From positions 1,178,001-1,242,000 of the forward strand of contig NW_026889805.1 in assembly GCF_033153115.1 (NCBI RefSeq): a stretch of 64,000 nt of DNA, read 5' to 3'. This DNA is from Saccostrea echinata. Lineage: Eukaryota. The position numbers and the translations under genes are program-made. Under the pieces are notes generated by a model. That model did not search any database and had not been told where the DNA came from. It saw only the letters and a list, made by a program, of their open reading frames with translations. How positions within the stretch are numbered: the first letter of the stretch is position 1; the number at the start of each line of letters is the position of its first letter. This document shows, one piece after another, positions 11,789 through 36,070 of the stretch.

Positions 11789-13024
11789 ATGAGCTCCACG
11801 AGAATGGCCGGACTATTTTTCGCTGTGAGTTCTCTTACTTGTTTATTTATGTTTTCCGAGGCATATACAATAAATGATGAACTGAGTCTACATGCTGCGA
11901 TATTCAATTCCACATACGACCGCGACGTTCGACCGGGAGCAACTAGGTCCACTCCATTACAAATTAATGTGACATTTACCTTTAAGAGTATTAAGGAGCT
12001 TGATGAATCTGTCGGGAAATTCTCCATTACTGGAGCACTAGGGGTCTTCTGGGTAGACCATCGATTGTCATGGAATCCAGCTGATTACGGAGGGGACTTG
12101 AATACTACCGTGGTCCCCCAAAAGAAAGTCTGGATACCCTTCCTTGTTAATATGATGGACTTTGATACACTGAAGGAGATCGGTCATAACGAACTACATT
12201 TACGAGTTGGGAGCGACGGAATAGTCACTTGGGTCACGCCTAACATGTTTGAGAGTACTTGTGACGCTGATATGTCGTATTATCCATTTGATTCACAAAC
12301 TTGTATCTTGAAGTTCTATATACCAGGATTCACATTCTCCGAAATCGAGTTTACAATCCCTAGGACCTCCATGGACATGAATGAGTATAGTAAAAACGGA
12401 CTCTGGGAAGTGAAAGAAACTCGAATCTATACTGCTACAAACTCGCAACAAATTCAAGAGTTGCGAATGGCCATCAGCATGAAAAGGCGACCGGTGTATT
12501 ATATATCTAGTTTGATACTGCCAGTTGCTTTTCTGTCATTTCTACAGTTAATAGTATTTCTTATGCCACCAGATTGTGGTGAACGTGTTGGATTTGTTAC
12601 CACGGTCCTTCTAGCCATTGCTGTCTATCTCACCTTAGTACAAGATAAATTACCAGAAGGTTCGGAGCCCAGTGTTTCATACCTCAGTTACAAACTGTTG
12701 GGAGACTTTATGATCGGAGTATTCATGACGATAAGTGTTATTGTTGGGCTACGGTTTTATCATAGGGAAGATGAAAAAATAATTCCCAGTTACTTGGAGA
12801 CGTTTCACAGAATTTCATTTGGTTGCTGTCGTTGCAGGAGAAAACATAAAGTGAATTTGGAAGAGAAGGAAAGCACAAAAGAAGTGACAATAGATTCTGT
12901 ATCTAAGATTCTGACATGGCGAGACATCGGAATGGCAACAGATCGTTTCAGTCTTATCTTCTTTGGAATGATGTTGTTTAACTGCAACTTTGTTTATCTT
13001 GTTGTGATGGCTGCCTTTGCTTAG
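11789..13024 (+). CDS. Divergent nAChR-like Cys-loop ligand-gated ion channel subunit, intronless CDS (copy 1, 411 aa)
   Basis: Signal peptide, YDRDVRP, WVDHRLSWNP, Cys-loop CDADMSYYPFDSQTC, pre-M1 KRRP, M2 GERVGFVTTVLLAIAVYLTLVQDKLP, M4 preceded by DR. No vicinal Cys pair in loop C. Confidence 0.93.
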   Translation: MSSTRMAGLFFAVSSLTCLFMFSEAYTINDELSLHAAIFNSTYDRDVRPGATRSTPLQINVTFTFKSIKELDESVGKFSITGALGVFWVDHRLSWNPADYGGDLNTTVVPQKKVWIPFLVNMMDFDTLKEIGHNELHLRVGSDGIVTWVTPNMFESTCDADMSYYPFDSQTCILKFYIPGFTFSEIEFTIPRTSMDMNEYSKNGLWEVKETRIYTATNSQQIQELRMAISMKRRPVYYISSLILPVAFLSFLQLIVFLMPPDCGERVGFVTTVLLAIAVYLTLVQDKLPEGSEPSVSYLSYKLLGDFMIGVFMTISVIVGLRFYHREDEKIIPSYLETFHRISFGCCRCRRKHKVNLEEKESTKEVTIDSVSKILTWRDIGMATDRFSLIFFGMMLFNCNFVYLVVMAAFA

Positions 13025-14689
13025 AAGTATCGCATTCGTATTTTTCCAATACAAAAATACCGTATAATGAGTTAATTTAGCGAAGTGCAAAGTTCGCGAT
13101 CTTATCCTTAAAAAGGTTTTTATTATTTGCACAGTTAATTTTTAGCAAGAGTAGGAATAGTCCTGTCTATTTTCTAATACAATATTTGTTTTTGAATTAT
13201 AAGTGACAAATATTTTAGTGATACCACAACCATCTCATAATGACAAAATTAGATGGTCGCTAAAACTGCTAATTATACGGTATGTAACCTTTCCCTGTTT
13301 TAGATAATCAAGTTCATGCCACAAAACGAAAATGTTTAGTACTAAATCTTATGGTCAACTTAAATGTGTAACAGAACAATTTTTGAAAAGAAAATTACAG
13401 TTAAAGAAAGTCAAATATTAAAACTATGATTTTGTCTAATCAGAAAGTGGTCTCCCAAGTACTAGATTAAAAATGTCTGAGTGCCAGACTTCAGCCCTTT
13501 TAGAATCCCCCATCAGGTGATCCTTCACTTTACGACTATCCATTATGTCAACATAAGAAGCACATATGTATGTAAAAAGTAATTTATTAAAGTAGACTAA
13601 ACACTCTTTTTCACTGACGTTCATTGAAGGCCTAAGTCAGATCACCATCGTTTAAATATTTGTTAAGTTAAGCTTTACAAAAGTCCCCTCAGATCATCAT
13701 AATTTCTGTATATATTGGCACTTGAGAAAAGCAAAATGGAAATTTTTAACATTTTTTCTCTATCTCCTACGTTAAACAAGGAGCAAGATTCACAAAGGTT
13801 TGATTATTACTCGGTATAATTTAAAAAAATATTCAAATTAAAATTGTACAAAGAAAAATCTATAATATCCAATGTAGCCTAACGACTTCATATGTAAAAA
13901 AAAAAAATATGAAAATAACTTCTTTATTACGCATATTTTGATCTTGAAGTAAACTATCAATTATCATTTTAAAAGCTGCATTTCAATATGTTTTTCATAG
14001 AGATCAACAACGTTTAAATTCAGTTAAACCTATTTTTTATGATTATTACATGATTATGCCTTATTTTGGGATGTACTTAAAGTGGCAGGCTTCTGATAAA
14101 TAAGTTGATTTTATATTTTCACACTAACTTGTGTATAGATAACTTTGTTTATCCGATCACAACAATGGGCTTATGGCAGATGGGACTGATGGACTGGGGA
14201 TAGCTCTCAATTTGTACGGTTTAATTTTAAATTATGGTATTTTTACTGTTTTTTTCCTATATTTTATTCAAATGCGTTGAATTAGAGAAGGTCTTTTTTT
14301 TTCAAGTTGTAGACACTAGTCAGGAAATTTTTTTTGTAATGAACGCAGGACGTCTGCCTTTATATTTTTGTTTGTAACTCTACAAAGACTGACAACTGAT
14401 TTAATGCTAGATAATCCAAGCCACTTTGTGTAAGTAGCTCTTGTTTTTGAATAAATACATTGAAGTTTGTACTGAGGAGATCTGGAAGTGAACAACGTAA
14501 ATACAATTTACAGAGAGAAACAAAACATTTAGCGCATAAAAACAGATATAGTGTTTGCTTGCAAATACAAAGATATATGAGTCAAAAGTTACAAGTATAA
14601 TAAAAAAGAAGAAATCATAAAAAATCCAATGAAAACGGATTTAATGAATCTATATAAATCATGAACAAAATATTAAACTATAAACGCCT

Positions 14690-34840: not shown

Positions 34841-36070
34841 ATGAGTGCAACTAGAATATTTTTGAGATTGGCATATCTGGTGTGTATTTCATCTTTGACT
34901 AAGACGTATACATTAAAAGATGAGCTGAACCTTCATGCAGCAATATTCAATTCCACCTACGACACGAATGTTAGACCGGGAGAAAATAGGTCGATTCCAT
35001 TACAAATAAATGTTACTTTTTACTTCAAGAGTATTAAAGAGGTTGATGAATCTATTAGTAAATTCTCCATAACGGGAGCCCTTGGTGTGATGTGGAAAGA
35101 CGACCGTTTGACTTGGGAGCCTTCTTACTTCGGAGGGGACCTGTATATCACAATTGTCCCACAGAAGAAGATTTGGATGCCTTTCCTTGTCAATATTAAT
35201 GCATATAACGAATTGAAAGAGATTGGTTCCAGCAACATGGATCTAAGGATAGAAAGCAATGGAGGAATAACTTGGGTTACGCCCAACATTTTTGAGAGTA
35301 CTTGTGACGCCGATATGTCCTACTATCCATTCGATTCTCAGACTTGTACATTACGATTCTATATACCAGGGTTCATGCCCTCTGAGATCGCATTTACGAT
35401 TCCTGAGAATAGCATAAACATGAATGAATACAGTAAGAATGGTCTGTGGGATGTGACAAATACTAGGATGTATACAGCCCTAAACATTCTTCAGTTCCAG
35501 GAGGTACGAATGTCCGTCACAATGAAAAGACGACCGGTTTATTACATATCAAGTTTGATATTACCAGTTGCTTTTCTCTCTTTTCTTCAGTTGTTTGTAT
35601 TCTTGATGCCACCTGATTGTGGTGAACGTGTTGGTTTTGTTACCACGGTCCTTCTAGCCATTGCTGTCTATCTCACCTTAGTACAAGATAAATTACCAGA
35701 AGGTTCTGAACCCAGTGTTTCATACCTCAGCTATAAGCTACTCGGGGACTTTATGATCGGAGTGTTCATGGAAATTGGCGTTATTATTGGGCTACGATTC
35801 TATTATAGAGAACATGAACAAAGAATTCCAGACTACTTAAAAACGCTTCATAGAATTTCCTTTTGTGACCTCTCCTGTTGTTACTTAAAAAAGCACAAAG
35901 TGGCTACTGATGAAAAGGAAACCATGGAAGAGATAAAGAACCCTGTGTCTGAGCCACTTACCTGGCTGGATATCGGAAAGGCGACAGATCGCCTCTGTCT
36001 TTTTATGTTTGGATTCGGTCTGATGAATTGTAACATAGTGTACCTGATTGTCATTGTGTCGTTCTATTAG
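34841..36070 (+). CDS. Divergent nAChR-like Cys-loop subunit, intronless CDS (copy 3, ~409 aa)
   Basis: Start placed at MSATRIFL by alignment with copies 1 and 2; the ORF is open from 34745 and there is a probable 5'UTR acceptor ttttcag at ~34780. Cys-loop CDADMSYYPFDSQTC and M1-M4 are intact. Confidence 0.9.
   Translation: MSATRIFLRLAYLVCISSLTKTYTLKDELNLHAAIFNSTYDTNVRPGENRSIPLQINVTFYFKSIKEVDESISKFSITGALGVMWKDDRLTWEPSYFGGDLYITIVPQKKIWMPFLVNINAYNELKEIGSSNMDLRIESNGGITWVTPNIFESTCDADMSYYPFDSQTCTLRFYIPGFMPSEIAFTIPENSINMNEYSKNGLWDVTNTRMYTALNILQFQEVRMSVTMKRRPVYYISSLILPVAFLSFLQLFVFLMPPDCGERVGFVTTVLLAIAVYLTLVQDKLPEGSEPSVSYLSYKLLGDFMIGVFMEIGVIIGLRFYYREHEQRIPDYLKTLHRISFCDLSCCYLKKHKVATDEKETMEEIKNPVSEPLTWLDIGKATDRLCLFMFGFGLMNCNIVYLIVIVSFY

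What the first reader, a model, noticed from the sequence alone, without database searches (positions are those of the whole stretch)
11789..36070. Tandem array of intronless Cys-loop channels that have lost the acetylcholine-binding box: candidate bivalve chemosensory (chemotactile-like) receptors
Seen: three intact paralogs and one relic, all co-oriented with intronless CDSs. By eye alignment to nAChRs, every canonical agonist residue is replaced: loop A WxPDIxLYN becomes W(I/M)PFLVN(M/T/I), loop B FGSW becomes FYI(P/Q), the loop D Trp becomes Ala (ITGALGV), and loop C is short with no vicinal CC (IYTATNSQQIQE / IYIAINSQQIQE / MYTALNILQFQE). M2 keeps the cation-type GER ring and the M3-M4 loop is very short. 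Known: cephalopod chemotactile receptors are intronless, clustered nAChR derivatives that lack ACh-binding residues, and bivalves have large nAChR expansions. Inference: this array may detect environmental or settlement cues, with paralog differences concentrated in the ligand loops.
Basis: partly seen in the sequence, partly recalled or inferred. Interest (0 to 1): 0.8.

Follow-up and report, generated by a model that had tools for sequence, protein, structure and literature searches.

The report
Orphan acetylcholine-receptor-like channel genes in oyster
Three intact single-exon genes and one broken fragment in a rock-oyster genome encode nicotinic-receptor-like ion channels that have lost every acetylcholine-contacting residue; they are real and kept by selection, but they belong to an already described bivalve gene expansion, and a role in sensing environmental chemicals is untested.

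Summary
On the + strand there are three complete single-exon Cys-loop channel genes: p1 at 11789-13024, p2 at 28668-29903 and p3 at 34841-36070. There is also a 5' relic at 22445-22981. All three genes have the Pfam ligand-binding and membrane domains, an intact Cys-loop, a cation-type M2 and a short M3-M4 loop. The loop A, B, C and D acetylcholine residues are all replaced. The N gap is intergenic and lies inside a repeat.

The genome is Saccostrea echinata. It holds at least 102 such intronless matches in many tandem arrays, and two more lie just upstream of the window.

The replaced pocket motifs (FSITGALGV, W[IM]PFLVN, FY[IL]PG[FY]) recur in Ostrea, Crassostrea, Magallana and Saccostrea. 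The genes are under purifying selection (dN/dS 0.16-0.23), although p2 evolves asymmetrically fast.

Paralog differences are not significantly concentrated in the ligand loops (p=0.22). The proteins are no closer to cephalopod chemotactile receptors (19-21% identity) than to alpha7 (24%).

Expression could not be shown.

Best reading: functional orphan, non-cholinergic cation-channel subunits from the known bivalve intronless nAChR expansion (Jiao 2019). The chemosensory idea stays a plausible, untested sub-hypothesis. First-stage readers flagged the same kind of gene on two other pieces of this genome.

The parts
11789..13024 (+). p1: intact single-exon nAChR-like Cys-loop cation-channel subunit gene (411 aa)
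   Evidence: ORF. PF02931+PF02932. Best PDB matches are nAChR alpha6/alpha3/beta at E 6e-39. AF2 pLDDT 87 for a full pLGIC fold. Slow, constrained lineage: 21 synonymous against 11 nonsynonymous changes.
22445..22981 (+). Relic: partial DNA-level duplicate of p2. The 5' flank is 22445-22739. The first ~80 codons run from the ATG at 22740, are frameshifted near 22875 and are truncated at 22981.
   Evidence: blastn 22445-22981 against 28380-28920, 75.7% over 559 nt. tblastn hits fall in two frames. Sequence read directly.
25793..25964 (.). Assembly gap (172 N), intergenic, inside a dispersed repeat. It interrupts no receptor sequence.
   Evidence: N runs listed and no tblastn homology between 22981 and 28668. 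Flanks 25632-25774 and 25996-26435 are collinear with 19587-19736 and 19846-20336.
28380..28667 (+). p2 5' flank, shared with the relic. It is the only non-coding homology among the copies.
   Evidence: p1/p2 DNA homology runs only from 9 nt before the ATG to 34 nt after the stop.
28668..29903 (+). p2: intact single-exon paralog (411 aa, 82% identical to p1). Fast-evolving copy with loop B Gln and loop A Thr.
   Evidence: Lineage-polarised 13 synonymous against 34 nonsynonymous changes, versus 21 against 11 in p1, Fisher p=0.001.
34841..36070 (+). p3: intact single-exon paralog (409 aa from Met33; the ORF opens at 34745). It has a 92%-identical ortholog in Saccostrea cucullata.
   Evidence: One 228-nt contig of run X1 at 35677-35904 with 2 mismatches.

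Best explanation
The window holds part of a tandem array in Saccostrea echinata. Five intact genes and one relic lie within about 47 kb of contig C56. All belong to the bivalve-specific intronless nAChR-like expansion.

p1, p2 and p3 encode complete subunits of pentameric ligand-gated cation channels. The gating machinery is intact: Cys-loop, pre-M1 Arg, M2-M3 Pro, and the -1' Glu, 9' Leu and 20' Asp of M2. The orthosteric pocket no longer has the aromatic box on either face, so these subunits cannot form a classical acetylcholine site among themselves.

The box has been replaced by a different pocket that is conserved across Ostreidae. Loop D has Ala/Gly, loop A has Phe and an aliphatic residue, loop B has Pro, and loop C is short and lacks the Cys pair.

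The most likely mechanism (inferred, not shown) is a homo- or heteropentamer of neighbouring paralogs, gated by a non-cholinergic and still unknown ligand, that passes cations.

History. The copies arose by old local DNA duplication: dS is 0.47 for p1-p2 and above 1 to p3. Only the coding sequence has been retained, possibly with gene conversion at the gene ends and in M1-M3. One copy, p2, shows relaxed or redirected selection.

Whether the physiological role is sensory, neuronal, developmental or immune is open.
For: Identity and completeness:
- Pfam, PDB sequence and fold matches; AF2 model.
- Colinear full-length alignment to NCBI-annotated orthologs: P0004 at 92% and M. gigas XP_011417818 at 61%.

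Lost ACh residues and kept pore and gating residues. Invariant columns include C158, C172, P166, D168, R233, G264, E265 and P289.

Selection:
- dN/dS 0.21, 0.16 and 0.23 for the three pairs; ECD 0.11-0.18.
- Fisher p 3e-22 to 5e-41.

Conservation of the new pocket:
- The same motifs occur in O. edulis, C. virginica, M. gigas and S. cucullata.
- A 14-member clade has SH-aLRT 97.
- Loops A, B and D have entropy 0.47-0.73 against 0.76 for non-loop ECD.

Context:
- At least 102 intronless matches in arrays in this genome, and two more at C56:1166993-1168219 and C56:1174681-1175856.
- Species identified by exact identity of L003 and L004 to NCBI S. echinata proteins.
- Published background: PMC6896357.

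Transcript-like Logan contigs of repeatable length exist for orthologous clusters (2.12-2.23 kb; 4.67-4.77 kb; 1885 nt four times). This suggests the subfamily is transcribed in other oysters. It is an inference.
Against: - No direct expression evidence for p1, p2 or p3. Only one weak run was found, of uncertain RNA or DNA nature. It has a single 228-nt, depth-3 contig over p3, and otherwise only repeats.
- No ligand, assembly partner or current has been shown.
- p2's nonsynonymous excess could mean it is losing function.
- Loss of the aromatic box does not prove that ACh cannot act. It could act at an interface with a canonical subunit or at a non-classical site.
- The low synonymous divergence in M1-M3 may slightly inflate or deflate the dN/dS estimates.
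Confidence: 0.78

Rival explanations
1. First reader's view. The array encodes environmental chemoreceptors, convergent analogues of cephalopod chemotactile receptors. They would be expressed in exposed sensory epithelia (mantle edge, gill, palps, pediveliger foot) and gated by waterborne or surface-bound cues such as settlement inducers.
For: - The gene-level syndrome is shared with chemotactile receptors: intronless, clustered, nAChR-derived, ACh residues lost, cation pore kept (Annu Rev review PMC11526382).
- A molluscan survey reports a 'CR-like' clade reaching bivalves and suggests independent shifts of ligand specificity (PMC13174522).
- In C. gigas, seven nAChR-like genes are pediveliger-specific (bioRxiv 10.1101/2020.03.25.004614).
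- Loops C, E and F are the more variable parts of the ECD (entropy 1.07-1.24).
- p2 changed two box-equivalent positions, M122T and P179Q.
Against: - No expression or ligand data exist for these genes.
- Pocket loops A, B and D are strongly conserved across four oyster genera. That fits one conserved ligand better than a diversifying chemoreceptor repertoire.
- There is no enrichment of paralog differences in the loops (p=0.22) and no window with pN/pS near 1.
- There is no special similarity to CRT1 or CRB1.
- Published oyster data tie the expanded nAChRs to early development and to immune and stress responses as well (PMC6896357).
Confidence: 0.2
2. They are accessory (structural) subunits. 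They co-assemble with canonical ACh-binding oyster nAChR subunits and tune conductance, trafficking or desensitisation without binding agonist, as vertebrate beta3 and alpha5 do.
For: - Best sequence matches include non-binding or complementary subunits: beta4, muscle beta, delta, epsilon.
- Pore and gating residues are fully conserved while the pocket is not.
- NCBI names orthologs as beta-like or non-alpha.
Against: - Accessory subunits usually keep much of the loop D, E and B framework. Here both faces are rewritten into a new motif that is itself conserved for the whole of Ostreidae. That argues for selection on the pocket rather than neglect of it.
- Over 100 such genes per genome is far more than accessory roles would need.
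Confidence: 0.15
3. They are retrogene-derived copies drifting towards pseudogenes. The lost ACh residues simply reflect relaxed constraint.
For: - One copy is already a truncated, frameshifted relic.
- p2 shows 34 nonsynonymous against 13 synonymous lineage-specific changes.
- Jiao et al. report more silent genes among intron-poor nAChRs.
Against: - The ORFs are intact despite dS of 0.47 to above 1.
- dN/dS is 0.16-0.23 with p below 1e-20.
- There is a 92% ortholog in S. cucullata.
- Motifs are conserved across four genera.
Confidence: 0.04

Closest known systems
Bivalve intronless, tandemly arrayed nAChR expansion (Jiao et al. 2019, BMC Genomics 20:937; PMC6896357)
   Same: Single-exon CDS, tandem co-oriented arrays, lineage-specific clades, and a divergent ligand-binding domain. 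In C. gigas only 13 of 33 alpha-type subunits keep the principal binding residues. The same oyster family is involved.
   Different: That paper did not describe this pan-Ostreidae subfamily or its replacement pocket motif (loop B Pro, loop D Ala, loop A Phe). It did not treat S. echinata.
Cephalopod chemotactile receptors (CRT1, PDB 9e6b/8eis family; CRB1, PDB 8eiz)
   Same: nAChR-derived pentameric cation-channel fold, intronless and clustered genes, loss of ACh-coordinating residues.
   Different: - Only 19-21% identity to p1, against 24% to alpha7, and absent from the top 60 sequence hits.
- The CR pocket is reported to be under diversifying selection, whereas this pocket is conserved.
- CR expression in sucker sensory cells and gating by hydrophobic compounds have no counterpart evidence here.
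Alpo4, orphan nAChR-like receptor of the annelid Alvinella pompejana (PDB 8bx5; PMC10338036)
   Same: Lophotrochozoan orphan Cys-loop receptor without the loop C Cys-Cys. Its authors found no response to ACh or serotonin. 24% identity, Z 25.7.
   Different: Alpo4 keeps the key aromatic residues, including the loop B Trp. The oyster proteins do not.
Canonical neuronal and muscle nAChR subunits (alpha6, alpha3, beta4, alpha7)
   Same: Best sequence and structure matches (E 6e-39; Z 32.6). Same domain order, Cys-loop and cation-selective M2.
   Different: Aromatic box and vicinal Cys are absent, the M3-M4 loop is much shorter, and the CDS is a single exon.

Membership tests
Cys-loop pentameric ligand-gated ion channel superfamily (nAChR branch) | Neur_chan_LBD plus Neur_chan_memb domains and four TM helices | tested here: met
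   PF02931 at E 1e-37 to 1e-38 and PF02932 at E 1e-12 to 1e-13 in all three. The AF2 model shows M1-M4. Z 32.6 to alpha7.
Cys-loop pentameric ligand-gated ion channel superfamily (nAChR branch) | C-x13-C Cys-loop with (F/Y)PFD | tested here: met
   CDADMS(Y/F)YPFDSQ(T/I)C in p1-p3.
Cys-loop pentameric ligand-gated ion channel superfamily (nAChR branch) | Cation-selective M2 (-1' Glu, no PAR motif, 9' Leu, 20' acidic) | tested here: met
   PP(D/E)CGERVGFVTTVLLAIAVYLTLVQDKLPE aligned to alpha6/alpha3 M2.
Acetylcholine-binding nAChR subunit (functional definition) | Principal-face aromatic box: loop A Tyr, loop B Trp, loop C Tyr-x-Cys-Cys...Tyr | tested here: not met
   Loop A Tyr becomes M, T or I. 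Loop B Trp becomes P, Q or P. Loop C is short and has no Cys-Cys.
Acetylcholine-binding nAChR subunit (functional definition) | Complementary-face loop D Trp | tested here: not met
   Trp becomes Ala in ITGALGV.
Bivalve intronless tandem nAChR expansion (Jiao 2019) | Single-exon CDS | tested here: met
   Uninterrupted ORFs, colinear over their full length with annotated orthologs.
Bivalve intronless tandem nAChR expansion (Jiao 2019) | Tandem array and placement in a bivalve/oyster-specific clade | tested here: met
   Three genes and a relic in 24 kb, two more upstream, and at least 102 matches genome-wide. Oyster-only clades have SH-aLRT 94-100.
Cephalopod chemotactile receptors (CRs) | Intronless, clustered, nAChR-derived, lacking ACh-binding residues | tested here: met
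Cephalopod chemotactile receptors (CRs) | Phylogenetic membership in the CR clade | tested here: inconclusive
   No CR sequence could be retrieved for a tree: two word-based searches returned no cephalopod proteins. Similarity argues against membership: CRB1 19% and CRT1 21% identity against alpha7 24%, and neither is in the top 60 PDB hits.
Cephalopod chemotactile receptors (CRs) | Diversifying selection on pocket residues | tested here: not met
   No loop enrichment of differences (p=0.22). Windowed pN/pS is about 0.15-0.2. Loops A, B and D are conserved across genera. A proper codon site-model was not run.
Cephalopod chemotactile receptors (CRs) | Expression in peripheral chemosensory cells, and gating by poorly soluble or environmental molecules | not testable with these tools

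The most novel reading that the evidence does not exclude
The pan-Ostreidae subfamily, marked by loop B Pro, loop D Ala and loop A Phe (FSITGALGV / WxPFLVN / FYxPG), would be an independently evolved, CR-like family of ionotropic chemoreceptors. It would let oysters, including competent larvae, detect a conserved external cue such as a settlement or conspecific signal. p2-type fast-evolving copies would be sampling new ligands.
Probability: 0.15. Interest if true: 0.75.

Novelty: new member of a known kind. Interest (0 to 1): 0.32.

Why it matters
Bivalves carry 100-200 nAChR-like genes whose ligands and roles are essentially unknown. Whether part of this expansion is a second, convergent invention of ionotropic chemoreception, as in octopus and squid, is an open and testable question.

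This array does not answer it. It does supply well-defined, intact candidates for expression mapping and de-orphanisation:
- p1, a slow, constrained copy;
- p2, a fast-evolving copy with changes at box-equivalent positions;
- p3, a copy with a clear cross-species ortholog.

It also supplies a conserved replacement-pocket motif that defines a pan-oyster subfamily. In itself the locus is one ordinary example of a published phenomenon.

Tried and rejected
- A tree that includes cephalopod chemotactile receptors. Two homologous-protein searches (single sequence; 16-sequence profile) returned only bivalve, unnamed-environmental and one cnidarian or nematode hit. With no cephalopod sequence, the CR-inclusive phylogeny could not be built. 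Similarity to the solved CRT1 and CRB1 structures was used instead.
- Expression. The look-up of sequencing runs on 28400-36300 gave a single weak run of uncertain type. Read laying showed mostly a SINE-like repeat and one 228-nt contig in p3. This is inconclusive.
- The van Giesen 2020 paper and the Allard primer are not held.
- A literature search for the M. gigas ortholog accession found nothing.
- Pseudogene or decay hypothesis: rejected for p1 and p3 by dN/dS and orthology.
- The idea that the gap truncates the relic or hides part of a gene: rejected. The relic ends 2.8 kb before the gap, and the gap flanks are collinear with a repeat copy.
- Retroposition hallmarks (poly-A tail, target-site duplications) were looked for by eye around p1 and the relic. 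None were seen. Paralog homology ends within tens of nucleotides of the CDS, so the mode of the original duplication cannot be read from this locus.
- The big representative-protein search and the ESM Atlas were not used. The family is clear and neither gives names.
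Full report
**What is there**

The window is G000:C56:1178001-1242000 of a 923-Mb assembly. The organism is therefore the black-lip rock oyster.

On the + strand there are three uninterrupted ORFs: 11789-13024, 28668-29903 and 34745-36070. 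tblastn with each of them finds only these three plus a short two-frame match at 22775-22980. Nothing else in the 64 kb is receptor-like.

The third ORF most likely starts at Met33 (34841). p1 aligns from there, and the S. cucullata ortholog P0004 (92% identity over 409 aa) begins at that Met.

**The gap**

The N run at 25793-25964 lies 2.8 kb after the relic ends and 2.4 kb before the p2-flank homology begins. An intact gene starting at the relic's ATG would already have ended near 24.0 kb.

The gap's two flanks (25632-25774 and 25996-26435) are collinear with a single repeat copy at 19587-19736 and 19846-20336. The gap therefore sits within an intergenic dispersed repeat and affects no reading frame. 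I did not try to fill it. The number of copies in the array is formally a lower bound.

**Identity of the proteins**

- All three carry PF02931 and PF02932.
- Their best solved relatives by sequence are human alpha6/alpha3/beta4, Torpedo and mammalian muscle beta/delta/epsilon, and alpha7 (E 6e-39 to about 4e-30).
- An AlphaFold2 model of p1, built on a 52-sequence alignment, has pLDDT 87. It shows a signal helix, the alpha1 helix, the beta-sandwich, M1-M3, a short amphipathic helix, a 24-residue disordered stretch and a continuous MA-M4 helix.
- Foldseek and VIA-align rank nAChRs first: alpha7 at Z 32.6 and 24% identity.

**The residue claims**

HMMER alignments to alpha6, alpha3 and Torpedo beta, and a MAFFT alignment containing a canonical Nematostella subunit (VWVVQKW, WVPDIVLYN, FGSWTY, YTCCP), put the following under the agonist-contacting positions:

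| Position | In p1, p2, p3 |
|---|---|
| Loop D Trp | Ala |
| Loop A Asp | Phe |
| Loop A Tyr | Met, Thr, Ile |
| Loop B Trp | Pro, Gln, Pro |
| Loop C | 8 residues shorter, no vicinal cysteines |

The Cys-loop, the pre-M1 Arg, the M2-M3 Pro and the M2 ring residues (-1' Glu, 9' Leu, 20' Asp) are intact.

**The relic**

It is a DNA-level partial copy of p2. Homology covers 22445-22981 against 28380-28920 (75.7% over 559 nt), which includes about 290 nt of 5' flank that p1 and p3 do not share. The ATG is at 22740, there is a frameshift near 22875, and homology stops abruptly inside the ITGAL codons, after which unrelated repeat DNA follows.

**Are the genes alive?**

| Pair | dN/dS | dS |
|---|---|---|
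| p1-p2 | 0.21 | 0.47 |
| p1-p3 | 0.16 | 1.25 |
| p2-p3 | 0.23 | 1.05 |

- The extracellular domain is at 0.11-0.18 and M1-M3 at about 0.1.
- The excess of synonymous over nonsynonymous change is overwhelming (Fisher p 3e-22 to 5e-41).
- p3 has a 92% ortholog in S. cucullata.

These are old, constrained genes, not decaying retrocopies.

Two refinements follow.

- Synonymous divergence is mosaic. For p1-p2, pS is 0.18-0.28 at both ends and 0.45-0.61 over codons 91-240. In every pair it dips to 0.32-0.39 in M1-M3. This suggests gene conversion or synonymous constraint.
- Evolution after the p1/p2 duplication was asymmetric. With p3 and L001 as outgroups, p1 accumulated 21 synonymous and 11 nonsynonymous changes, whereas p2 accumulated 13 and 34 (Fisher p=0.001). 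p2's changes include M122T and P179Q at the loop A Tyr- and loop B Trp-equivalent positions. They are not enriched in the loops overall.

**Context in the genome and in oysters**

The same genome gives at least 102 matches at E below 1e-20. Almost all are open frames of about 400 aa without stops, lying in many tandem clusters. Two more lie immediately upstream of the window (C56:1174681-1175856 on +, C56:1166993-1168219 on -).

Of 23 own-genome members that I aligned:
- none has the loop C Cys-Cys;
- none has the loop D Trp in register;
- six keep the loop B Trp.

A maximum-likelihood tree (LG+C20, SH-aLRT) gives these groupings:
- p1+p2 (100);
- p3 with its S. cucullata ortholog (100);
- a C14 gene with its S. 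cucullata ortholog (100);
- all of the above, plus an Ostrea/Crassostrea/Magallana group, in a 14-member clade (97);
- the two upstream neighbours in the sister clade of a 36-member oyster group (94).

Cluster look-ups name members of the 14-clade as Ostrea edulis XP_048777220, Crassostrea virginica XP_022326290 and Magallana gigas XP_011417818. The M. gigas protein is 61% identical to p1 and carries FSITGALGV, WMPFLVNML and FYLPGY. The rewritten pocket is thus a conserved, pan-Ostreidae character.

The Logan contigs of those clusters have strikingly repeatable lengths (2.12-2.23 kb; 4.67-4.77 kb; 1885 nt four times). This is what repeatedly assembled transcripts look like. I take it as indirect evidence that the subfamily is transcribed in other oysters.

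**Testing the interpretation**

- The concentration is not there. Among p1, p2 and p3, 42% of loop positions vary against 33% of other ECD positions (Fisher p=0.22). For p1-p2 alone the counts are 14 of 67 against 16 of 145 (p=0.09).
- Across the 14-member clade, loops A, B and D are more conserved than the ECD average. Loops C, E and F are somewhat more variable. Overall the difference gives Mann-Whitney p=0.058.
- Windowed pN/pS stays near 0.15-0.2.

This pattern fits a conserved ligand or a structural role better than a diversifying chemoreceptor repertoire, although loops C, E and F leave room for tuning.

Similarity to the solved cephalopod receptors is lower than to ordinary nAChRs. Squid CRB1 is at Z 24.2 and 19% identity, and octopus CRT1 at Z 22.9 and 21%. 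Alpha7 and annelid Alpo4 are both at 24%. Neither CR is among the best 60 sequence matches.

I could not retrieve cephalopod sequences for a proper tree. Membership in the CR clade is therefore unproven and looks unlikely, and the resemblance is best read as convergent.

**Expression**

When laid on 30300-36300, it covers mainly a tRNA/SINE-like repeat at 33315-33530 at enormous depth, plus other repeats. One 228-nt contig at 35677-35904 inside p3 has 2 mismatches at depth 3.

A pooled larval and adult black-lip oyster transcriptome was published in 2018 (PMC6201952). It may or may not be this run.

Expression of p1-p3 is therefore unresolved.

**What is already known**

- Jiao et al. 2019 (PMC6896357) described 99-217 nAChR genes in bivalves, many of them intronless and in tandem arrays. 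Their ligand-binding domains are diverse: in C. gigas only 13 of 33 alpha-type subunits keep the principal binding residues. Expression occurs in early development and in immune and stress responses.
- A 2026 preprint (PMC13174522) reports molluscan clades with substituted agonist-coordinating residues, a 'CR-like' clade reaching bivalves, and the idea of independent shifts in ligand specificity.
- The Alpo4 paper (PMC10338036) makes the same argument for an annelid orphan.
- In C. gigas, seven nAChR-like genes are pediveliger-specific (bioRxiv 10.1101/2020.03.25.004614). This keeps the settlement-cue idea alive for the family in general.
- Two first-stage notes flagged the same kind of gene elsewhere in this genome.

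**Verdict**

The genes are functional orphan subunits of non-cholinergic cation channels. They belong to a pan-oyster subfamily within a published bivalve expansion. The chemosensory reading is a reasonable but untested sub-hypothesis (about 0.15-0.2), and one of its stated supports does not hold.

What is new here is limited to three things:
- the definition of the conserved replacement pocket;
- its taxonomic span;
- the asymmetric evolution of p2.

Noticed in passing
window 11789-13024 vs 28668-29903 (and 34841-36070): Synonymous divergence is mosaic along the genes. For p1-p2, pS is 0.18-0.28 at codons 1-120 and 241-411 but 0.45-0.61 at codons 91-240. All pairs dip to 0.32-0.39 in M1-M3. 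This suggests gene conversion at the gene ends and in the TM core, or constraint on synonymous sites.
   Followed up: partly
window 28668-29903: p2 evolved asymmetrically after the p1/p2 duplication: 34 nonsynonymous and 13 synonymous changes, against 11 and 21 in p1 (Fisher p=0.001). The changes include the box-equivalent positions M122T and P179Q. Relaxation and neofunctionalisation were not distinguished.
   Followed up: partly
G000:C56:1166993-1168219 (-) and C56:1174681-1175856 (+), just upstream of the window: Two further intact intronless nAChR-like genes (45-46% identical to p1, from a sister subfamily). The array therefore has at least five intact genes in about 47 kb and is not wholly co-oriented.
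   Followed up: partly
window 33315-33530: A short repeat whose flanking read ends contain a tRNA-like GGTTCGAATCC box (SINE-like). It is present at extreme depth (about 25,000) in the one public run laid. Related copies lie at 18759-18948 and 24756-24937.
   Followed up: no
window 8423-9503 and 54914-56047: Two minisatellite arrays. One has a 28/58-nt unit with about 37 copies; it is GC-rich and strongly C-skewed. The other has a 34/102-nt unit with about 32 copies.
   Followed up: no
window 51971-53779 (-): A 602-aa ORF rich in Gly, Ser, Tyr and Pro, with a hydrophobic N-terminus and no Pfam match. It looks like a low-complexity secreted protein, perhaps matrix- or adhesive-like.
   Followed up: no
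window 58399-59901 (-) and 46766-47158 (-): A 500-aa ORF with an exonuclease-like N-terminal motif but no Pfam hit at E below 0.01 (also noted by a first-stage reader as TREX-like). A 130-aa ORF with a weak death-effector-domain match (E 0.0014, below the Pfam cut-off).
   Followed up: no
p1 residue 346 (M3-M4 loop, CCRCRRKHK): A cysteine in the short intracellular loop is nearly invariant across the whole intronless family alignment. It may be a lipidation or assembly site.
   Followed up: no
window 46532-46666: A second assembly gap (135 N), outside the finding, flanked by 21- and 45-nt tandem repeats.
   Followed up: no
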